A stretch of DNA of 63,691 nucleotides, filler included, from Octopus bimaculoides (lineage: Eukaryota), in the NCBI RefSeq assembly GCF_001194135.2. It is 9 parts of 7 records of this genome, joined end to end, with 100 filler letters (N's around TTAATTAATTAA, not from the genome) between each part and the next. Parts side by side here need not be neighbours in the genome. Positions count along the whole stretch, not along the records: positions 1 to 15,839 come from NC_068982.1; 8 more parts are not named here. One strand, given 5' to 3'. The notes under the pieces were generated by a model that saw only the letters and a program-made list of their open reading frames with translations, was not told the origin of the DNA and ran no database searches. This document shows positions 1,898 to 55,643 of this stretch, in pieces (the stretch's first letter is position 1; each line of letters begins with the position of its first letter). Both the position numbers and the translations under genes were made by a program.

Positions 1898-4110
1898 TCT
1901 TCTTCTTCTTCTTCTTCTTCTTCTTCTTCTTCTTCTTCTTCTTCTTCTTCTTCGTATTTATTAAGTAGTATGATTTCTTGTTTGTATTTGTCAGCTTCCT
2001 TAAATACTGAAAAGTTTTTTGTTTTGCTCGTGTTTTGTGGCTATTTGTATTAGTTTTCCTTGCTTCTGAAGTAGGTATTTTTGCAGTCCTACGGTAGTCA
2101 TTTTATAATAGTTTTCCAGCTGCATAAGACCCCTACCACTGTCTGTATGTTGTATATATATAGCCTTTCTATGTCAGATTTTGGGTGGTGCATCTTAGTT
2201 CCTGTCATTATTTTTCTTGTTTTCCTGTCTATTTTAGATAGTTCGTTAAGGATATTGTAGCTGTAACTTATAACTGGGACGGCTAAAGTGTTAATACCTA
2301 TTATCTTGTTTTTAGCATTGAGCTCTGTTTTTAGTATTGATCTAACTCGTCTATAGTACTCTTTCTTTATTTTTTCTTTCATTTGTTGTGTTGTATCCTA
2401 TCTAGTTCATTGATTCCTGAATATTTGTATGACTGGCTTTCGTCTAATTTTCTTATTTCATTGGCTTTATCTAGTGTAATGTTGCTACTCTTAACTAGTT
2501 TTCCTCTTCTCAGGGTTGCTTTGGCACATTTTTCTAATCCGAATTTCATATCTATATCCTTGGCAAATCCATGTATTGTCTGTAATAGTGTTTCCAGCTC
2601 TTTATCATTTCTAGCGTATAATTTTAGGTCATCCATATATAAAAGGTGGCTGACTGTTTTGCCGTAACATTTGTATTCGCATCCAGTTCTATTTAGCAAT
2701 TCAGTTTAAGGTGTAAGTGCCAGGCAGAACAGGAGTGGAGAGAGCGTGTCTCCCTGGAATATTCTCTTCTAATGGGGATGGCTTTCGTTTTCACTGTCTG
2801 CCATTTATTCATAGGGTGCCTTATGTATTTTATAATAATTGGTGCCACCTTCTTTATGGCTAGTGTTTCGAGGATCCACGTGTGGGGTACACTCTCGAAA
2901 GCCTTTCGGTAGTCGATCCAGGCCATACTGACGCTTTTCTTCTTTCTGCGGCTGTCTTCAGTTATGGCTTTATTGATCATTAATTGATCTTTACAGCTGT
3001 ATGAGCTCTTGAAGCATCCCTTCTGCTCTTCTGGAAACAGGTTGTTATTTTCCAGGTGCTTACTCAATCTCTGCAATATTATTGCAGTAAAGGCTTTATA
3101 GATTGTAGGGAGACAGGTTATAGGTCTGTAGTTTTGTGGTTTCTCCGTTTCCATGGATTTGGGAATTAAGATGGTTTTTCCCTTTCGTGAGCCATTGAGG
3201 CATTGTCTCTGGCTCTGCTAGTATGCATTCCTGTCAGGTAGTTTAACCAGAAGTTGGGGATCTTGTCGTGCCCAGGTGCTTTCCAGTTTCTAAGTCTTTG
3301 CAGTGCCTGGGTGACCTCTTCAGTTGTTATAGGGGTCCAGAGTTGCTCAGGTGCTAAGTTCGTTGTTTTAATGATCCTTTTCTGAGGTTGTTGCTTCACC
3401 GACCATATTTCTTTCCAAAATTCTTCTACTTCTTCTGCTATTGGTGCTGCAGTAATGTCTATTTTATTTTTACCCAGTTCTTGGTAGAATTTTTTGAGGT
3501 TGGATTTGAACTGTTTGTTTTGTTCAAAGAAACGTCGGCGTTTCTCATACCGGCGGATCCTTTGTGCTTTGGCAAGGATATCTTGCTTTAGTTTTTCTTT
3601 TGCCTCAGGTAAATCTTTTTCTGTAATGTTGTATTTGTACAGTATTTTTGTTTTCTTCTTGTTACTTAGTTGTGTTGATTGTCTACTAATTTCATTGAGA
3701 ATCGATAGATCTTTTCTCTTTTTTAAAATTTTGTTTTGGATATTATTTATCCACAAGGTCTGTTTAGGTTGTGGAACTCCTGTTCGAATGGGTTTGAGGG
3801 AGTATCCTGCTTCTTTTGTGGCTGCAGTGGCTGCCACATATATTATGTCATTTAGCTCAGTGATATTGCCAGTTGTTTCTGTGGCTGTTAGTTCCGTGAC
3901 GGCCAGGTTTATGTTATTTATTATTGATGTTGTTTTATTGTCTATTTTGATTTTTGGGAGATATAATCTGTGGTCCATTCTAAGATCTGTGGTTTTCAGT
4001 TCTTTGGTTATTCTCATTTTTATAGTATCATAATCATTAGGTTTCCCTTCGATACTCCCAGGTTTTTGATTTGTTTCGCCTTCCTTTTCATTCATATGTT
4101 TGTCTGTGGT
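1898..4110 (-). mobile_element. R4/Dong-type non-LTR retrotransposon, degenerate and internally deleted (N-terminal region plus RT)
   Basis: ORF pieces with RT motifs [66 protein letters not shown]. Frameshifts and stops. Probably the same copy as 788-1046 across the gap. Confidence 0.88.
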
Positions 4111-4773
4111 GTCCTAGGGTCGATTTGTTCGGCTAATGGTGATGCTCCAGCATGGCCGCAGTCGGGTGACTAAAACAAGTAAAGGAATAAAAGAATACTA
4201 ACAACATTTTAACCATTCATCTTTTCCCCATTTATTGTGCATTATATTTTCAATTTCTATTGTATTGTATAACACTAGGTAACAATCTTTTTAAAAATTC
4301 TATTACAGACACGTTAACTACTGATTCCTACCAAATTTCTGATGCTAATTTCAGATCTGATATCTAAATTTTTCTATCTCATCCGCTTCTATTATGAAAG
4401 CCGTCTAAGCTACTTTTCTTTGCCACGTTTTATGTTAAGCATACTTAAATAATTAGTCTTTTACCATTGTATTCGAATGGGTTTAAGGATGGTGACCTCT
4501 TCAAAAAAAAAAAACAAGTGTGGTGTGGTCATCACTGAAAGTCTTTTTGCTTTCTTTCTCTCTTCCCCTTTTTTCCTTTCTTTTTTCTTTCTTTTCTCTC
4601 TTTTCTTTCCTTCCCCTTTCTCTTTTCACCTTTTTTCTATTTCTTTTCTCTTCTTTCCTTCTTTTTCCGCTTTCTTTTTCTCCTAGAATACAAAATAGAA
4701 TCCAAAATGTACTGTCTTTTCTTTTCTTTCAAACATTCAATTTTAGAGAGAATTTTTTAATGAAATGTAGTTC

Positions 4774-4821
<48 letters not shown>

Positions 4822-5858
4822 CATGGTCATGCAGATAAGTTGGAACCAATTTCAAGCAGTTGACTTTGTGGGTTTAACATTTCATTTTTTGACAAAACCT
4901 TGCTTACTTGAAAATCTAATCCTTTTTATTTTTCAAATAAATGGCAAATTGACTCGACAACAGAAAGTCATGGAACAACAAAATCGTTCCACCATTGTTG
5001 TTCTGGCACGTGCGGGGTACGCGGCCAATAGAATTGTTAAGTTGACGAAACTTCCAAAACCGACAGTTTATCGTGTATATAAACAATTTAAAGAGAAGAG
5101 TCGAAGTGATTCCAAGTGATATGAAAGAACACAAGAGTCGAAGTGATTCTCACTGGCCTCAAACGCTCGACTGAAGCCAACCCATCCACATCAATGACAA
5201 TTCTTGCAAAGAAACGCAATGTGTCCCTTTCCACAGTGTCCAGAGCTGTGAACAGGAACCTTAGCATGACTAACTGTGTTCGGCAACACTGTCACCTCCT
5301 AACAGTCAAGGCAAAAGCAGCCAGAGCCTAGAGATGCCCAAATATTCTCTTATTCATCAAGCATCAATGTGCAAGAAAAACTTTCGTGTTTGTGAACGAG
5401 AAGTTCACTGTGGACGCTGAGGTGAATCGTAGAAATTCTCGAGTGATTGCATACAACCCTTCTGACATCCCCATTCTGTTTGAGACTAAGAATCTTGCCT
5501 CTGTGATAGTATTTGGAGCCGTGGCGAGTAATGGAAGTGACATGGATCCACATTTCATTGAGTCTGGCTTGAAGATCGGCACAAAGGAGTATCTGGACAT
5601 CCTGAAGAACTCTTTGTTACCTTATATGGAGCAGAAGTTTTGGATTGACAATGTAGTGCTTATCCAGCGTTCTGCACCATGCCATGGGTCAAAAGCAACA
5701 CAGGCTTTCTATGGCGAGATGGTGACGTTTTTTGTGAGGGCCAACGTCTGGCCTAGTAATAGCCCAGATCTCAACCTTCTCTGTTACGTTTAATGGAGCG
5801 TACTTCAAGCAAGGGCCAATGGTTCACCACACACGAGAGTTAACAGTTTGAAGATCTG
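4822..5858 (+). mobile_element. Tc1/mariner superfamily transposon, maT (DD37D)-type, inactive
   Basis: N-terminal HTH MEQQNRSTIVVLARAGYAANRIVKLTKLPKPTVYRVYK from 4970. Catalytic region VFVNEKFTVD...IQRSAPCH...WPSNSPDLNLLCY with exactly 37 residues between the second and third catalytic positions. No right TIR found. Confidence 0.75.
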
Positions 5859-6383
5859 ATATTTGACTAATCATTATATTTTGTATCTGTTCATTTGTCT
5901 CACTCGCTTACGTTCTGGCGTAAATTCAAGTGGGAGGAAGGTAAAGGACATACCGGAGTCCTTTACCCTCTCCTGCCCCCCACTAACTATCAAGCTAACT
6001 AACTCTTTTAATCTCCTTGATTGCAGAATTAATGTATTAATCTAATGGAAACGGTTTATATATATATATATNNNNNNNNNNNNNNNNNNNNNNNNNNNNN
6101 NNNNNNNNNNNNNNNNNNNNNNNNNNNNNNNNNNNNNNNNNNNNNNNNNNNNNNNNNNNNNNNNNNNNNNNNNNNNNNNNNNNNNNNNNNNNNNNNNNNN
6201 NNNNNNNNNNNNNNNNNNNNNNNNNNNNNNNNNNNNNNNNNNNNNNNNNNNNNNNNNNNNNNNNNNNNNNNNNNNNNNNNNNNNNNNNNNNNNNNNNNNN
6301 NNNNNNNNNNNNNNNNNNNNNNNNNNNNNNNNNNNNNNNNNNNNNNNNNNNNNNNNNNNNNNNNNNNNNNNNNNNNNNNNNNN

Positions 6384-7999: not shown

Positions 8000-8052
<53 letters not shown>

Positions 8053-8055
<3 letters not shown>

Positions 8056-8940
8056 GTAGTCTAATCAGTAAGTATCTGGAATGTTGCCATAGTAACGAGG
8101 TTAAAACATGCAGAGTGAAGCCGCTTGGCACAGATTGATCTTCAAATTTCCTGTGCATCAGCACTTAGTTTTTACGTTCTATCCCACTTACCCTGTTTAC
8201 AACAGGGCTTGGAAGGAACATATATAGCATGTGATCGTCGCATTGACCATGACAGAGGAAGTTGAGCAGTGAATCTGCATTAAATTTTGCCAAAAGCTTC
8301 GCAATACCTGCTCAGAAGATTACGCAAAGTTTTCAAGAGGCTTCCATCGTTCTCGACGCAGTGAAAGAGATCTTGTACAACTGAAACCCGAGTGTCCTTT
8401 TGCTCAACTGAAAGCAGTTGTGCCACAAACTTAGCAGACACGCGTCTCATACTCAAATCTTCAATGATAATAGAGTGAACTGAACCGCAACTAATTTGCA
8501 CATCCTCTGATAACTCACGGGTAGTGAGTCAACGATTTCCCTTCACAGATGCACGCACATCTGCAATGTTTTTTCTCAGTTCTGCTAGTCAAGGGTCTTC
8601 CAGAACGTTCATCACTGTCGACATTTTTTCGGCCATCTTGTAAACGTCTGAACCACTCGTACACTTGTGTGAAGCTCATACGCTCCTCTGCATACACTTT
8701 CTGCAACTTAGCGTATGCCCCTGAGCAGGCATCACCATGACAACTTACTCTGGCATGGTCAATGCGACAATCACACGCTACACACGTTCATCCAAGCACT
8801 GCTGTAAACAGTGGGAGTGAGTTAGAACGTTAAAACTCAGTGCGCATGCACAGCAGAGTCCAAGGTCAAGCTGTGCCATGCAGCTTCACTCTGCGTGCTT
8901 TAGCTTCGTTACTATGGCAACAGTCCCGATCAGACCTCGT
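8053..8940 (-). mobile_element. Mariner derivative with two 5' ends (copy 1); transposase N-terminal half on minus strand
   Basis: QVYEWFRRLQDGRKNVDSDERSGRP and MRRVSAKFVAQLL motifs. Ends are inverted copies of the TIR, 5' UTR and start codon region. TA at the left end. Confidence 0.88.
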
Positions 8941-9654
8941 TTTTATATATANNNNNNNNNNNNNNNNNNNNNNNNNNNNNNNNNNNNNNNNNNNNNNNNN
9001 NNNNNNNNNNNNNNNNNNNNNNNNNNNNNNNNNNNNNNNNNNNNNNNNNNNNNNNNNNNNNNNNNNNNNNNNNNNNNNNNNNNNNNNNNNNNNNNNNNNN
9101 NNNNNNNNNNNNNNNNNNNNNNNNNNNNNNNNNNNNNNNNNNNNNNNNNNNNNNNNNNNNNNNNNNNNNNNNNNNNNNNNNNNNNNNNNNNNNNNNNNNN
9201 NNNNNNNNNNNNNNNNNNNNNNNNNNNNNNNNNNNNNNNNNNNNNNNNNNNNNNNNNNNNNNNNNNNNNNNNNNNNNNNNNNNNNNNNNNNNNNNNNNNN
9301 NNNNNNNNNNNNNNNNNNNNNNNNNNNNNNNNNNNNNNNNNNNNNNNNNNNNNNNNNNNNNNNNNNNNNNNNNNNNNNNNNNNNNNNNNNNNNNNNNNNN
9401 NNNNNNNNNNNNNNNNNNNNNNNNNNNNNNNNNNNNNNNNNNNNNNNNNNNNNNNNNNNNNNNNNNNNNNNNNNNNNNNNNNNNNNNNNNNNNNNNNNNN
9501 NNNNNNNNNNNNNNNNNNNNNNNNNNNNNNNNNNNNNNNNNNNNNNNNNNNNNNNNNNNNNNNNNNNNNNNNNNNNNNNNNNNNNNNNNNNNNNNNNNNN
9601 NNNNNNNNNNNNNNNNNNNNNNNNNNNNNNNNNNNNNNNNNNNNNNNNNNNNNN

Positions 9655-10413: not shown

Positions 10414-11477
10414 GATGCATTATATTATTCATATTAGATGCATTATATTATTCATATTAGATAAAATATAAAGAGAGGTATGAGTAAGTTGTAAGAGGAG
10501 TAATATGGTAATTTATAAAATCAATATTCTTAAAATTATTTTAGTTATGTAAGNNNNNNNNNNNNNNNNNNNNNNNNNNNNNNNNNNNNNNNNNNNNNNN
10601 NNNNNNNNNNNNNNNNNNNNNNNNNNNNNNNNNNNNNNNNNNNNNNNNNNNNNNNNNNNNNNNNNNNNNNNNNNNNNNNNNNNNNNNNNNNNNNNNNNNN
10701 NNNNNNNNNNNNNNNNNNNNNNNNNNNNNNNNNNNNNNNNNNNNNNNNNNNTATATATATATATATATATATCCGTACAAACATACTCACAGGTACATAC
10801 GTATTAGATGTGTTTAGAAGCGAGGACTAATACAATAGTTCGTATCATTATAATTATATAATATAATTATAACAATAATACACAAACTTATATATATTTT
10901 CATATTAACATGTGATATGCTTATTTCTCCGTTATTTTTTTTTTCTTTAAGGAGTAGTTGAACTCCTGCGGGACGTGGGGAGGGGTTATTTTTGTTCAGT
11001 CACGTAATCTAGTTGGTCATCTATTGTTTTGAAAGGCCTTGACTTTGTTAGGTATATGTATCTGTGCATATTTATGTATATGAATGTATATGTAAAAGTA
11101 TGCATATGTGTGTGTATTTATATTTATAACTTAATCTTATGTACTTTCTAAAATCTCTGACGAAGCCTAGAGAAACACCCAAAGTACCTCAATTTCATCT
11201 ACTAATTATTTCAGTCCACTGGAGGGATAAAGGTAGAATGAGGTATTTTTGCTTCTTGACTGAAACAGCTGTAAGATAATATCCCAATTTCTATTGCTAT
11301 ATGTTATATATTTTAATAATTACTGATATTTTATATTTTATATATTTTATATGTAAAGCATAATATATCATACATGAGTGTATATTGTTATAATTGTCCT
11401 TTTAGTAAATAAATAACTTGACATAATATTCTATAACTTGATGAATACCACCTATTGATTCCCTCCATTTTTTTATT

Positions 11478-11795: not shown

Positions 11796-12218
11796 GGTAT
11801 CCGCAATTTGCAATAAAGAAATAACATGGTTAGACTAAGAAGTTTTCAGAAAATATATGGATTACATCAGAAGATACTGTAGCAATATAGGCAATCAATT
11901 TCATTTACTACAGTTATGATAAATGTTCAAATTGTAAGCCATTAGCTTCAACGCATTGTTGACAACGTGAAAGCACACTGTGACAAACTTTGGTACACAA
12001 GTCTGGATCAAGGTTAGTAAAAATACATTAATAATGAACTGCGGAAGATCTTCAATACTTCTTGGCTTCCTTGACTTACAAATTGTTTGTGATCAGGATC
12101 ATCCACCAGAAGTCCGTGAATTAGGCGTGGAATGTAAGGTTTCATATTGAGTTTTCTAAGTATTTTATGCAGTGATGTGCATTTCATACCAATTTCAGAA
12201 CTACCACGGCGAATTGAT
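11793..12218 (-). mobile_element. Tc1/mariner transposon remnant with the catalytic core deleted
   Basis: SIRRGSSEIGMKCTSLHKILRKLNMKPYIPRLIHGL is joined almost directly to the C-terminus KPRSIEDLPQFIIN..LDPDLCTKVCHSVLSRCQQCVEANGLQFEHLS*. TIR-like end near 11793. Confidence 0.7.
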
Positions 12219-12672
12219 NNNNNNNNNNNNNNNNNNNNNNNNNNNNNNNNNNNNNNNNNNNNNNNNNNNNNNNNNNNNNNNNNNNNNNNNNNNNNNNNNN
12301 NNNNNNNNNNNNNNNNNNNNNNNNNNNNNNNNNNNNNNNNNNNNNNNNNNNNNNNNNNNNNNNNNNNNNNNNNNNNNNNNNNNNNNNNNNNNNNNNNNNN
12401 NNNNNNNNNNNNNNNNNNNNNNNNNNNNNNNNNNNNNNNNNNNNNNNNNNNNNNNNNNNNNNNNNNNNNNNNNNNNNNNNNNNNNNNNNNNNNNNNNNNN
12501 NNNNNNNNNNNNNNNNNNNNNNNNNNNNNNNNNNNNNNNNNNNNNNNNNNNNNNNNNNNNNNNNNNNNNNNNNNNNNNNNNNNNNNNNNNNNNNNNNNNN
12601 NNNNNNNNNNNNNNNNNNNNNNNNNNNNNNNNNNNNNNNNNNNNNNNNNNNNNNNNNNNNNNNNNNNNNNNN

Positions 12673-13230: not shown

Positions 13231-14525
13231 NNNNNNNNNNNNNNNNNNNNNNNNNNNNNNNNNNNNNNNNNNNNNNNNNNNNNNNNNNNNNNNNNNNNNN
13301 NNNNNNNNNNNNNNNNNNNNNNNNNNNNNNNNNNNNNNNNNNNNNNNNNNNNNNNNNNNNNNNNNNNNNNNNNNNNNNNNNNNNNNNNNNNNNNNNNNNN
13401 NNNNNNNNNNNNNNNNNNNNNNNNNNNNNNNNNNNNNNNNNNNNNNNNNNNNNNNNNNNNNNNNNNNNNNNNNNNNNNNNNNNNNNNNNNNNNNNNNNNN
13501 NNNNNNNNNNNNNNNNNNNNNNNNNNNNNNNNNNNATATATATATATATATACTGCCGATGGTATATACGTAGCTACTCAGACTGCGTGGACATCAGATA
13601 TCATGCTATTTATATCAACATTGTTGGAACACAACAGACTCATTTGTTGTCTCGGGTTACGTGAAATTTGTCTATAAATTAAGGTTCATCATTAAATTAT
13701 TATTAGGTTATAATTCACAAATAACAAGATAGTTTAAGGAAGGTAATTATTGAAACTTGAATTTTTAAAGCAGAATGATTAAACTAGTTTAAGGGAAGTA
13801 ATCGTAGTTGGTACTTGAAATGACAAGAGGGAAGTAATCTATTATTTATTTTAAAAATCGTAGTAATTAGAATGCAATTAAATTTCAAATTATTAACTGA
13901 AATTATTAAAAGGAAGATAGCATTAATATCACCACATGGAGTAGCTGTAGCCATGAGAAAGATACGAATGTGAAGAATAGTTGAAGGGAAATCGTTAATC
14001 GTTAACAGATATATCGTGAGTGGAGAATATTGGTAATAGAAAGGGAGGTAAATAACATTTTCAATGTCAAGTTTAAGTTCATATAGCGATATAACAACAC
14101 AGAAAGTTAGGTATTCGGTCACTTGGAATATCAATGATCAGTTTATTGAGAGTTTCATAAGCATAGTCTGACCCTACTTGTGCGACAGTCAGGTGGGTTG
14201 CTTTCCTCTTCACTCTACCTCATGACGGGTACAAAAATCTACCAAGCTTTCATTCTTTCAGCAAAATGTACCAGTTTTAGTATTTGTGTGATGAGGTGTA
14301 AAATAGACTATGGAATAATCAACAATGTAATAAAGAGGCTTAGCATCCACGGCATTTCAACATGCGACAGTCAATAGACGACAAAGATAACATAGTAATG
14401 GCGAAGCTAAACAACTACACGGATCTCTCTTTTGAGAACATTGCATCTGGTTTCAATCAGAAATACAAATTTCTATTAACCTTTAAATTTTATTTTTTTA
14501 ATTAATAGTTAATTAATAATTAAAA

Positions 14526-51920: not shown

Positions 51921-52650
51921 CGAGGTATGATCAATAAGTATCCGGACTGTTGCCGCAGTAACGAAGCTAAAGCACGCAGGGTAAAGCTACTAGGCAAAGG
52001 TTGACCTTGACGCCTGCTGTGCGTGTGCACTAAGTCTCGACGTTTTAGCTCACCTCCGCTATTTACAGCAGTACTAGGGTGGAAGGTGTGTAGCGTGTAA
52101 TGGTTGCATTGACCATGACGGAGAAAGTTGTCATGACGATGCCTGCGCAGAGGCCTATGCAACGTTGGGGGAAATGTGTGGAGGGAGGATTTGTATGAGC
52201 CGCAAACAAGTGTCCGAGTGGTTCAGACGTTGCCAAGATGGCTGAGAAAATGTCGATATTGACGAACGTTCTGGGAGACCCGTAACCAGCAGAACTGAGA
52301 AAAACATCGCTGATGTGCGTGCAGCTGTAAAGGGAAACCGTCGAATCACCGTCCGTGAGTTTTCAGAGGATGTGCAGATTAGTTACGTTTCAATTCAGTC
52401 CATTATCACTGAAGATTTGGGTATGAGACGTGGGTCTGCCAACATTGTGCCAAGGCTGCTTTCAGCTGACGAAGGTAACACACGGGTTTCAGTTGCACAA
52501 GATCTTAATTGTGTTGAGAACGATGAAAACTTTTTGAAAACTTTGCATAGACTTCTGAGCAGATATCACCAAGCCTTTGGCAAAATTTGATGCAGATTAT
52601 CTACTCAATTTTCTCTGTCATGGTCAATGAGACGATCATATGCTACACAC
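51921..52650 (+). mobile_element. Mariner derivative with two 5' ends (copy 2), right arm truncated by (TG)n
   Basis: TA-CGAGGTATGATCAATAAGTATCCGGAC TIR. Transposase N-half to FLKTL, then an inverted copy of the start region. Same junction as copies 1 and 3. Confidence 0.88.
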
Positions 52651-54834: not shown

Positions 54835-55643
54835 CGAGGTTTGATCAATAAGTATCCGGACTGTTGCCATAGTAACAAAGCTAAGGCAAGCGGAGTGAAG
54901 CTGCTTCACACAGTTTGACCTCGAATTCTGCTGTGCGTGCGCACTATGTTTTAACGTTCTAGCTCACTTCTGCTGCTTATAGCAGTGCTTTGAAGGAAGG
55001 TGTGTAACGTGTGACCGTCACATTGACCATGGCCGATACCTACTCAGAGGCCTAACCAAAGGTGCAGAAAGTGTATGGAGAGGAGTTTATGAGCCGCACA
55101 CAAGTGTACTACGGGTTCAAACGTTTCCAAGATGGCCTAAAAAATGTTGATATTGTCGAATGTTCTGGGAGATCCGTAACCAGCAGGACTGAGAAAAATA
55201 TCGCAGATGTGCGTGCATCTGTAAGGGGAAATCGTCAAATCACCATCCGAAGTTATCAGAGGATGTGCAGATTAGTTACGGTTCAGTTCAGTCCATTATC
55301 ACTGAAGATTTGGGTATGAAACACGTGTCTGCCAAGTTTGTGCCAAAACTACCTTCAGCTGTCCAAAAAGACACTCGAGTTTCAGTTGCACAATATCTCC
55401 TTGATTGTGTCGAGAACGATGAAAGCATTTTGAAAATTTTGCATAGGCCTTTGAACAGGTAGCGCCAAGCTTTTGGTAAAATTTGATGCAGATTCTCTGC
55501 TCAACTTTCTCTGTCATGATCATTGCGATGATCACACGCTACACACCATCCTTCCAAGCACTGCTGCAAATAGCAGAAGTGAGATAGAACGTTCAAACTT
55601 GATGCAAATGCACAGCAGAGTTCAAAGTCAGTCAGTGCCACGT
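54835..55643 (+). mobile_element. Mariner derivative with two 5' ends (copy 3)
   Basis: Same TIR. QKVYGEEFMSRTQVYYGFKRFQDG..ECSGRS..MKHVSAKFVPKL. Inverted arm encodes MTEKVEQRICIKFYQKLG on the minus strand. Confidence 0.88.

What the first reader, a model, noticed from the sequence alone, without database searches (positions are those of the whole stretch)
8053..8940. Mariner family with two left ends: catalytic half replaced by an inverted copy of its own 5' end, same junction in three copies
Seen: copies at 8053-8940 (-), 51921-52650 (+) and 54835-55643 (+) all run TIR, 5' UTR, transposase DNA-binding region, ...(F/L)LK(T/I)L. They then switch at the same AAAACTTTGCATA-like point into the reverse complement of the first ~27 codons, the 5' UTR and the TIR. 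Effective inverted arms are therefore ~250-280 bp. The intact N-terminus (MTEKVEQRICIKFCQKLG) survives only on the short inverted arm. The long arm has a ~31-nt frameshifting deletion shared by copies 1 and 2. Copy 3 has a further CATG-to-CATG deletion that restores the frame. Read-through adds a common tail, (H/R)xLLSRYxxAFGKI*. Established: the break lies a few codons before the first catalytic Asp (TGDE) of mariner, and mariner N-termini bind TIRs. Inference: the rearranged form amplified as a non-autonomous family, since the copies lie on three different segments. With convergent 5' regions and long arms it could give hairpin or antisense RNA against the autonomous parent, a DNA-binding-only inhibitor, or ADAR substrates.
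Basis: partly seen in the sequence, partly recalled or inferred. Interest (0 to 1): 0.75.

Follow-up and report, generated by a model that had tools for sequence, protein, structure and literature searches.

The report
Old mariner remnant with two left ends
This is a dead copy of an old, multi-copy, non-autonomous mariner transposon, probably from an octopus genome, whose right half was replaced by an inverted copy of its own left end; the mirror-image kind of derivative is already published, so it is a real but fairly ordinary transposon fossil.

Summary
Window 8055-8939 (minus strand) is an 885-bp mariner derivative. It runs left TIR, a ~180-nt 5' UTR and the decayed HTH DNA-binding region up to ...LLKT, five codons before the first catalytic Asp. 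At a 3-nt microhomology (AAC, 8329-8331) it switches into the reverse complement of codons 1-27, the 5' UTR and the TIR. The arms are 277 and 235 nt and about 80% identical.

Independent data gave the same junction and the same 31-nt long-arm deletion in four more loci with unrelated flanks. The junction peptide also opens an Octopus bimaculoides gene model. A parent-type copy diverges exactly at the junction into TGDE-type sequence. All 25 relatives with both ends visible have 26-44-nt TIRs, so the long arms are not native.

Three further two-left-end elements with different junctions turned up in other lineages of this clade. All are about 0.9 kb.

Mirror-image (two right ends) mariner lineages and the Goblin MITE are published. 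The founder's 31-nt frameshift argues against a DNA-binding inhibitor.

The parts
8055..8939 (-). Whole two-left-end (LL) non-autonomous mariner element, 885 bp
   Evidence: End motifs CGTAGTCTAATC at 8055 and the reverse complement of CGAGGTCTGATC ending at 8939. Self inverted repeat with E 8.6e-49. Colinear with L085, L087, L090 and L091.
8904..8939 (-). Left TIR of the long arm (CGAGGTCTGATC...), carrying a copy-specific 10-nt deletion
   Evidence: Alignment with the short arm and the L001 outgroup. L087 keeps the 10 nt.
8757..8903 (-). 5' UTR of the long arm
   Evidence: About 72-75% identical to the 5' UTRs of relatives L001 and L002. Relatives have a TIR-to-ATG distance of about 200 nt.
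8332..8756 (-). Decayed coding region for the mariner N-terminal DNA-binding domain (ATG 8756-8754 to ...LLKT). Defects: TAA at codon 4 (8747-8745), 31-nt deletion between 8741 and 8740, +1 A in the run 8574-8569, TGA at 8531-8529.
   Evidence: Translations. Pfam HTH_48 with E 4.7e-6. Up to 65% aa identity to relatives. Motif coordinates.
8329..8331 (.). Junction microhomology AAC/GTT, shared by the end of the long arm and the end of the inverted short arm
   Evidence: The end motifs of the two arms overlap at 8329-8331. The parent-type copy L092 and relatives read GAAAAC|GGTC.... The N-terminal parent reads ...GCAAAGTT|GCAG.
8055..8331 (+). Short inverted arm: TIR (8055-8100), 5' UTR, ATG 8249-8251, then 27 codons plus 2 nt, with TGA at codon 8 (8270-8272). 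It retains the 31 nt missing from the long arm.
8000..8054 (.). (TA)n microsatellite flank. The 2 nt next to the element are CA where a TA duplication is expected.
8940..8951 (.). Other flank, TTTTTATATATA, followed by assembly gap 8952-9654. The 2 nt next to the element are TT (AA on the minus strand) where TA is expected.

Best explanation
Window 8055-8939 is a fossil copy of an old non-autonomous family derived from a DD34D mariner.

Origin (inferred). A single founding rearrangement joined the transposase gene, just after the Thr codon of FLKT (about residue 153, five codons before the first catalytic Asp), to the inverted codon 28 of the same gene at a 3-nt microhomology (AAC). The whole catalytic half, the 3' UTR and the right TIR were thereby replaced by an inverted copy of left TIR + 5' UTR + first 27 codons. 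The most likely route is abortive gap repair after excision. The strand being copied inward from the right TIR switches to the near-identical left TIR and copies the left subterminal region. The two nascent ends are then joined by microhomology-mediated end joining. This is the mirror image of the published Goblin model.

Before amplification the master copy also lost 31 nt after codon 6 of the long arm.

Spread (shown and inferred). The two-left-end element was then moved in trans by the family's transposase, which needs only two TIRs, and it spread to many TA sites. The shared junction at unrelated loci is shown; the agent of mobilisation is inferred.

Present state. This copy is dead. It has stops and frameshifts, a 10-nt deletion in one TIR, arms only about 80% alike, and decayed target-site duplications. 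If it lies in a transcribed region it would fold into a long imperfect hairpin, but no function is shown.
For: Anatomy.

Mariner identity: HTH_48. Relatives reach 65% aa identity, with the named snail Bradybaena similaris at 61% and other relatives in termite-gut and soil metagenomes. DD34D spacing in 19 of 19 relatives, and intact 345-354-aa ORFs in several.

Long arms are not native: 25 of 25 relatives with both ends visible have TIRs of 26-44 nt, and most are about 1.3-1.35 kb long.

Single founder plus amplification:
- The junction-spanning ORF retrieved P0050, P0084, P0087, P0054 and O. bimaculoides A0A0L8GD08.
- Contigs L085, L087, L090 and L091 are colinear across the junction and show the same GAAAAC|TTT junction.
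- All five long arms lack the same 31 nt and all five short arms keep them.
- Flanks are unrelated.
- Parent-type copy L092 diverges exactly at the junction into TGDE-type sequence.

Age: copies are 58-72% identical pairwise and 73-91% identical to the majority consensus.

Precedents: Rpmar49 and Rpmar17 (PMC4678618) and Goblin (PMC3814204). Mariner transposases act on LL and RR constructs; for Mboumar-9, LL is 2x more active than the natural arrangement (PMC4505599).
Against: No autonomous partner with an intact ORF was found in the host. The nearest intact relatives come from other organisms.

Target-site duplications are not intact in this copy (AA and TG) and only half intact in L085 (TA and CA). 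Transposition therefore rests on the shared junction at unrelated loci, not on clean TSDs.

The 31-nt difference between the arms fits origin from two different parent copies as well as, or better than, self-templated copying.

Copy number genome-wide is unknown. The host of the Logan contigs and of the window itself is not confirmed; O. bimaculoides is inferred from one protein model.
Confidence: 0.82

Rival explanations
1. Same end product, different origin. Two parental copies inserted head to head, or one into the other. A single deletion from codon ~153 of one copy to codon 28 of the other left an element bounded by two left ends. This is the dimer-deletion model that Filee et al. proposed for Rpmar49 and Rpmar17.
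For: The arms differed by the 31-nt deletion already in the master copy. That is expected if they came from two different copies. The model is published for the mirror-image case (PMC4678618). Polarised substitutions between the arms are unequal, 26 versus 11.
Against: The 31-nt deletion could equally have arisen in the master copy after a self-templated event. The outgroups used for polarisation are only about 72% identical. Four independent LL events in this clade (window family, L058, L093, L094) would each need a head-to-head pair.
Confidence: 0.35
2. The element, or the family, works as a regulator of its parent. Convergent 5' regions or read-through transcripts would give hairpin or antisense RNA, feeding small-RNA silencing or ADAR editing. 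Alternatively it encodes a DNA-binding-only inhibitor.
For: Predicted RNA fold of -411.8 kcal/mol against -263 +/- 6.9 for shuffles, z = -21.6. From my own knowledge (Sijen and Plasterk 2003), TIR read-through dsRNA silences Tc1 in C. elegans. The independent LL element L093 keeps an almost intact N-terminal ORF.
Against: The master copy already carried a frameshift after codon 6. All octopus copies are decayed at a neutral-looking rate. The 'common tail' is simply the antisense of the N-terminal codons, and its stop is not conserved. Any long inverted repeat folds well.
Confidence: 0.07
3. The family natively has long TIRs, like LTIR-type or IR/DR-type Tc1/mariner elements, and this copy is a plain internal deletion.
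For: Long-TIR mariner-like clades exist, with TIRs of about 460 bp (PMC5490172).
Against: 25 of 25 relatives have 26-44-nt TIRs and a short 3' UTR. The arms contain the start codon and 27 codons of the transposase. Parent-type L092 continues into the catalytic domain at the junction. Relatives are DD34D, not DD40/41D.
Confidence: 0.02
4. Assembly artefact: a chimeric join or a palindromic contig next to the gap at 8952.
For: The window is a gap-rich draft with seven N runs, and the element abuts one of them.
Against: The arms are only about 80% identical and differ by two indels, unlike technical palindromes. The microhomology is 3 nt, too short for a k-mer mis-join. The same junction occurs in independent contigs from other runs and in a UniProt gene model.
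Confidence: 0.01

Closest known systems
Rpmar49 and Rpmar17, rearranged non-autonomous mariner lineages of Rhodnius prolixus (Filee et al. 2015, PMC4678618)
   Same: One end of a mariner is replaced by an inverted copy of the other end that includes transposase-coding sequence. This gives exceptionally long TIRs (221 bp in Rpmar49). Rpmar49 has a single progenitor that amplified (13 copies). Sizes are 922-970 bp against 885 bp here. Origin is attributed to abortive gap repair.
   Different: The polarity is opposite. There the 5' part is replaced by the 3' part (two right ends). Here the 3' part is replaced by the 5' part (two left ends), so the element keeps the 5' UTR twice, plus the DNA-binding-domain coding region. 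The host is an insect rather than, probably, an octopus. Rpmar17 copies have variable breakpoints, whereas the octopus family has one.
Goblin MITE derived from Ozma, a Tc1/mariner element of Aedes aegypti (Yang et al. 2013, PMC3814204)
   Same: Subterminal sequence of one end is inversely duplicated at the other end, lengthening the TIRs. The junction lies at a short inverted microhomology (AACTTT there, AAC here). The proposed mechanism is a template switch between TIRs during gap repair followed by MMEJ.
   Different: Goblin is a true MITE with 54-bp TIRs and no coding remnant, and it duplicates the right subterminal region. Here the arms are 235-277 nt, the element is 885 bp, and it keeps about 425 nt of coding remnant.
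Engineered LL and RR mariner transposons (Trubitsyna et al. 2015, PMC4505599)
   Same: They show that mariner transposases mobilise elements bounded by two copies of one end, and that one end is preferred. For Mboumar-9, LL is 2x more active than the natural arrangement and RR is 3x less active.
   Different: These are laboratory constructs carrying only the ~30-bp IRs. For Mos1 the preference is the reverse: RR is 26x up and LL is 50x down. Which end this family prefers is unknown.
Ordinary internally deleted mariner lineages of 800-950 bp (Rhodnius and Drosophila; PMC4678618)
   Same: Same size class, same dependence on a partner's transposase, and breakpoints at microhomologies.
   Different: Those keep a left end and a right end in the native arrangement.
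Tc7 of C. elegans (from my own knowledge, not checked here)
   Same: A ~0.9-kb non-autonomous element with long inverted repeats (~345 bp), whose outer part matches Tc1 and which Tc1 transposase mobilises.
   Different: Its internal sequence is unrelated to the Tc1 coding sequence. It was not shown to be a duplication of one Tc1 end that includes coding sequence.

Membership tests
mariner (Tc1/mariner superfamily, DD34D) | Terminal inverted repeats of about 30 bp of the CGAGG... type | tested here: met
   Both ends start CGAGGTCTGATC / CGTAGTCTAATC. Relatives show CGAGGGCTGATCAAAAAGTATCGGAAC. Similar TIRs are listed for drosophila-subfamily lineages in PMC4678618; that is a lead only, not a subfamily assignment.
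mariner (Tc1/mariner superfamily, DD34D) | TA target-site duplication | tested here: inconclusive
   The window copy has AA and TG where TA is expected, and both flanks are TA-rich. L085 has TA and CA. Relatives L003/L004 and the LL element L058 have clean TA on both sides.
mariner (Tc1/mariner superfamily, DD34D) | N-terminal paired HTH DNA-binding domain (Pfam HTH_48) | tested here: met
   PF17906 with E 4.7e-6, 27.1 bits against a cut-off of 24.1, on the read-through translation.
mariner (Tc1/mariner superfamily, DD34D) | DD34D catalytic domain | tested here: not met
   It is absent from this element by construction. tblastn finds only N-terminal matches. It is present with 34-residue spacing in 19 of 19 relatives. 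The element is therefore a non-autonomous derivative, not an autonomous member.
Rearranged long-TIR non-autonomous mariner lineages (Rpmar49/Rpmar17 type; Goblin type) | One end replaced by an inverted copy of the other end, extending into subterminal or coding sequence | tested here: met
   The short arm 8055-8331 is the reverse complement of TIR + UTR + 27 codons.
Rearranged long-TIR non-autonomous mariner lineages (Rpmar49/Rpmar17 type; Goblin type) | The same junction in several copies at unrelated loci (single progenitor, then transposition) | tested here: met
   Five DNA loci share the junction and the 31-nt deletion and have unrelated flanks. One O. bimaculoides protein model also carries the junction.
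Rearranged long-TIR non-autonomous mariner lineages (Rpmar49/Rpmar17 type; Goblin type) | The parent family has short TIRs | tested here: met
   25 of 25 relatives have TIRs of 26-44 nt.
Rearranged long-TIR non-autonomous mariner lineages (Rpmar49/Rpmar17 type; Goblin type) | Mobilised by an autonomous partner in the same genome | not testable with these tools
   The host genome is not searchable here. Only a decayed parent-type copy (L092) was seen.
MITE | Small size (under about 800 bp), no coding remnant, high copy number | tested here: not met
   The element is 885 bp and has about 425 nt of recognisable coding remnant. Copy number is unknown; at least 6 loci were seen.
LTIR-like / rosa-related mariner-like elements with native long TIRs | TIRs of about 460 bp in autonomous copies; DD40D or DD41D | tested here: not met
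   Relatives are DD34D with 26-44-nt TIRs. The definition is taken from PMC5490172.
Hairpin-RNA / endo-siRNA source or ADAR substrate | Transcribed inverted repeat giving dsRNA, small RNAs or A-to-I edits | not testable with these tools

The most novel reading that the evidence does not exclude
Two-left-end derivatives may be a recurrent and favoured outcome in this mariner clade, whose members have a ~200-nt 5' UTR of conserved length, rather than a one-off accident.

At least four independent events were seen: the octopus family, L058, L093 and L094. Two of them break within a few bases of the same codons (after F-L/F-K-T/S, and at inverted codons 25-28). All four converge on 885-934 bp.

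This would mean that the left TIR plus 5' UTR is the preferred end and carries cis-acting transposition enhancers. LL elements would then out-compete their parents as hyper-parasites, and with their convergent 5' regions they might also seed dsRNA against the parents.
Probability: 0.15. Interest if true: 0.5.

Novelty: new variant of a known kind. Interest (0 to 1): 0.3.

Why it matters
It adds the mirror-image case to a known route by which mariners generate long-TIR non-autonomous lineages. It also shows that this route has been taken repeatedly in one clade, always ending near 0.9 kb.

That gives a concrete handle on two standing questions. The first is which transposon end, and which subterminal sequences, mariner transposases prefer in vivo. 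The second is why non-autonomous mariners cluster at 800-950 bp.

For genome annotation it is a caution. One O. bimaculoides T-box gene model starts inside such an element. For the host, this particular copy is most likely inert.

Tried and rejected
There was therefore no read support, no copy-number estimate, no RNA, small-RNA or editing test, and no identification of the runs SRR11869384-94.
- Word-indexed protein search with the junction ORF found nothing. The index-free HMMER search was what found the other copies.
- Exact look-up of seven window ORFs found none in the collection.
- Exact-pattern scans for the junction in metagenome contigs, and for a conserved arm motif in genome contigs and viral contigs, gave 0 hits.
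- A search with the neighbouring reverse-transcriptase-element ORF, to name the host, gave only weak hits: Penaeus indicus 32%, O. bimaculoides 51% over 24% of the query. The host is inferred from A0A0L8GD08 only.
- A literature search for the run accessions found nothing.
- Assembly artefact and native long TIRs were considered and rejected (see rivals).
- Polarising arm differences with outgroups was too noisy, at 72% identity, to decide between the two origin models.
- Ascertainment bias: all my queries were N-terminal, so two-right-end derivatives in this clade could not have been found. The apparent excess of LL forms is therefore not evidence of a preference.

Full report
WHAT IS IN THE WINDOW

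The piece is a gap-rich, microsatellite-rich and transposon-rich draft of a eukaryote genome. It has seven N runs. Reverse-transcriptase ORFs lie at 2379-3154(-), with RVT_1 matches, and a weak HTH_23 match lies at 4520-5119(+).

The finding's element occupies 8055-8939 and reads on the minus strand. One flank is a (TA)n run. The other is TTTTTATATATA followed directly by the N gap 8952-9654.

The inverted repeat is far beyond chance. blastn gives 191 nt at 81.7% identity, E 8.6e-49, for 8074-8264 versus 8741-8930. With gaps the homology runs from the very ends.

ANATOMY

Reading the minus strand, the parts are:
- A TIR beginning CGAGGTCTGATC at 8939.
- About 180 nt of 5' UTR.
- The ATG at 8756-8754.
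- A decayed ORF whose read-through translation matches Pfam HTH_48, the Mos1 transposase HTH (E 4.7e-6, above the curated cut-off). It is up to 65% identical to predicted proteins (P0002), with the named snail Bradybaena similaris at 61% (P0001) and others from unnamed samples.

The ORF runs to ...VENDGSLLKT. In relatives that motif continues FLKT-V-(I/V)-T-G-D-E-S-W-V-Y-G-Y-D-P-E-T-K. The break is therefore five codons before the first catalytic Asp.

At 8329-8331 the sequence switches into the reverse complement of the element's own beginning. This short arm (8055-8331, plus strand) holds a TIR starting CGTAGTCTAATC, the 5' UTR, the ATG at 8249 and 27 codons plus 2 nt, MTEEVEQ*ICIKFCQKLRNTCSEDYAK.

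The short arm is 277 nt and its long-arm counterpart is 235 nt, with 373 nt between them. Two indels explain the length difference. One is a 31-nt deletion in the long arm just after codon 6. The other is a 10-nt deletion inside the long-arm TIR.

Further defects in this copy are:
- TAA at codon 4.
- A +1 A insertion in an A run. Together with the 31-nt deletion it restores the frame, which is probably chance.
- TGA in NR*LT.
- TGA at codon 8 of the short arm.

The dinucleotides where TA duplications are expected read AA and TG.

IS IT A FAMILY WITH ONE JUNCTION?

A word-indexed protein search with the junction ORF found nothing.

An index-free HMMER search with the junction-spanning ORF (8283-8501, minus) did find predicted proteins that continue through the junction into the same antisense tail. 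These are P0050, P0084, P0087, P0054 and P0052. P0052 is UniRef A0A0L8GD08 of Octopus bimaculoides. Its first 82 residues are 59% identical to the window's long arm and run to LLKSL|HRPLSR.

The DNA behind the others was fetched. L085 and L086 are one locus, L087, L088 and L089 are one locus, and L090 and L091 are separate loci. They align colinearly with the window element across the junction at 72-75% identity. A MAFFT alignment shows the same GAAAAC|TTT join in all of them.

All five long arms lack the same 31 nt, and all five short arms keep them. Flanks are unrelated. The contigs end in CA/TG microsatellites, like the window.

L092 (P0059) is a parent-type copy. It matches up to the junction and then continues ...KNGHNRSWVYGCDSET, a decayed TVITGDESWVYGYDPET.

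So one founding rearrangement, followed by a 31-nt deletion in the master copy, preceded spread to many sites. Copies are 58-72% identical pairwise and 73-91% identical to a crude majority consensus, which makes the family old. This fits the report that Mariner belongs to the ancient coleoid repeat set (PMC8967140).

ARE LONG ARMS NATIVE?

No. A profile search of metagenome contigs gave 80 loci of relatives. Together with two Bradybaena loci, 25 elements have both ends visible. All have TIRs of 26-44 nt and a TIR-to-ATG distance of about 200 nt, and most are about 1.3-1.35 kb long. The 3' UTR is short. Nineteen of nineteen relatives have DD34D spacing, and several have intact 345-354-aa ORFs.

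JUNCTION MECHANISM

The parent at the left breakpoint reads TTGAAAAC|GGTC (L092, L002). The inverted N-terminal parent reads CTGCAAC|TTTGCG. The product reads TTGAAAAC|TTTGCG. This is a 3-nt microhomology (AAC) with no filler.

It matches the template-switch plus MMEJ scheme proposed for the Goblin MITE, where the subterminal region of one end of Ozma is inversely duplicated at the other end (PMC3814204). The alternative is Filee et al.'s deletion between two adjacent copies (PMC4678618). I cannot separate the two models. The 31-nt difference between the arms slightly favours two parental copies, but a later deletion in the master copy explains it as well.

WHAT IS KNOWN

In Rhodnius prolixus, Rpmar49 (970 bp, 221-bp TIRs, 13 copies) and Rpmar17 (922 bp, 205 copies) arose by replacement of the 5' part with the 3' part, and transposase homology is present in the rearranged part. 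The octopus family is the mirror image.

Non-autonomous mariners cluster at 800-950 bp, and a size constraint has been proposed. In vitro, mariner transposases move LL and RR constructs and prefer one end. For Mos1, RR is 26x up and LL is 50x down. For Mboumar-9, LL is 2x up and RR is 3x down (PMC4505599).

RECURRENCE

While surveying relatives I found three more two-left-end elements with other junctions, each in a different sublineage.
- L058 is 918 bp, with arms of 214 nt at 86% identity and clean TA on both sides. The junction is ...GTRFESRD| joined to the inverted ATG. Its sister loci share its internal deletion but keep the normal 3' end.
- L093 is about 927 bp, with arms of 256 nt at 94% identity. 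The junction is FFKS| joined to inverted codon 25 plus 2 nt, and the ORF has only one TGA.
- L094 is about 934 bp, with arms of at least 206 nt at about 88% identity. The junction is DMLEC| joined to inverted codon ~33.

None has perfect arms, so they are not assembler palindromes. L093 and the octopus family break within a few bases of the same two places.

Because all my queries were N-terminal, two-right-end forms could not have been found. I therefore make no claim that LL forms are favoured.

FUNCTION

This copy cannot move or code. For the family, the master copy's frameshift after codon 6 argues against a DNA-binding-only inhibitor, and decay looks neutral. The 'common tail' is just the antisense of codons 1-27, and its stop is not conserved.

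As RNA the element would fold into a long imperfect hairpin (-411.8 kcal/mol, z = -21.6), as any such inverted repeat would. Whether it is transcribed, processed or edited could not be tested.

VERDICT

The structural interpretation is supported. The regulatory ideas are untested or disfavoured. The element is a new, opposite-polarity variant of a published kind of mariner derivative. Interest is low to moderate. The recurrence and the ~0.9-kb convergence are the only points a specialist might follow up.

Noticed in passing
P0052 = UniRef100_A0A0L8GD08 (Octopus bimaculoides), residues 1-82: This annotated T-box protein begins inside a two-left-end mariner copy and reads across its junction (…LLKSL|HRPLSR). 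The T-box domain then starts at profile position 26 of 182. The first exon of the gene model is probably a mis-annotated, or possibly exonised, transposon fragment.
   Followed up: partly
L058 33-950; L093 1-911; L094 1-837: Three further two-left-end mariner elements lie in other sublineages (termite-gut and other metagenomes). Their junctions differ, their arms are 86-94% identical, and all are 918-934 bp. L093 and the octopus family break within a few bases of the same codons.
   Followed up: partly
L002 995-1073 vs 1112-1192: A related soil-metagenome mariner has a local inverted duplication inside the catalytic domain. VKTMLTVFFD...APPGQTVN is followed, after 38 nt, by its reverse complement, which replaces the normal sequence. 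This is the same fold-back type of rearrangement on a smaller scale.
   Followed up: partly
window 8757-8903 and 8101-8248; L001 ~270-454; L002 ~275-416: The ~200-nt 5' UTR is kept in length across the whole clade. It is about as conserved (72-75% nt) between the octopus element and L001/L002 as the coding region is. This hints at cis-acting constraint, such as a promoter or transposase-binding or enhancer sequences.
   Followed up: no
window 8740/8741 and 8569-8574: In the window copy a +1 A insertion in an A run exactly re-phases the ORF after the family-wide 31-nt deletion (net -30). Given the three stop codons it is most likely coincidence.
   Followed up: no
window 2098-4095 (-), 4520-5793 (+), 12014-12217 (-): Other transposon remnants are present. 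A non-LTR-type reverse transcriptase gives RVT_1 matches at 2379-3154. Tc1-like ORFs give a weak HTH_23 match. A further mariner-like fragment (…LHKILRKLNMKPYIPRLIHGLL…) lies next to a gap.
   Followed up: partly
window gaps 1047-1897, 6072-6383, 8952-9654, 10554-10751, 12219-12672, 13231-13535: The assembly gaps whose borders appear in the ORF listings are bordered by (TA)n, (TG)n or similar microsatellites. The Logan contigs of the other copies also end in CA/TG repeats. Element ends lying in such repeats are therefore easily lost in assemblies.
   Followed up: no
window 8270-8272, 8529-8531: The TGA stops in the short arm and in NR*LT both sit where relatives have Arg, which fits CGA to TGA changes. 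This suggests CpG decay in a methylated genome.
   Followed up: no
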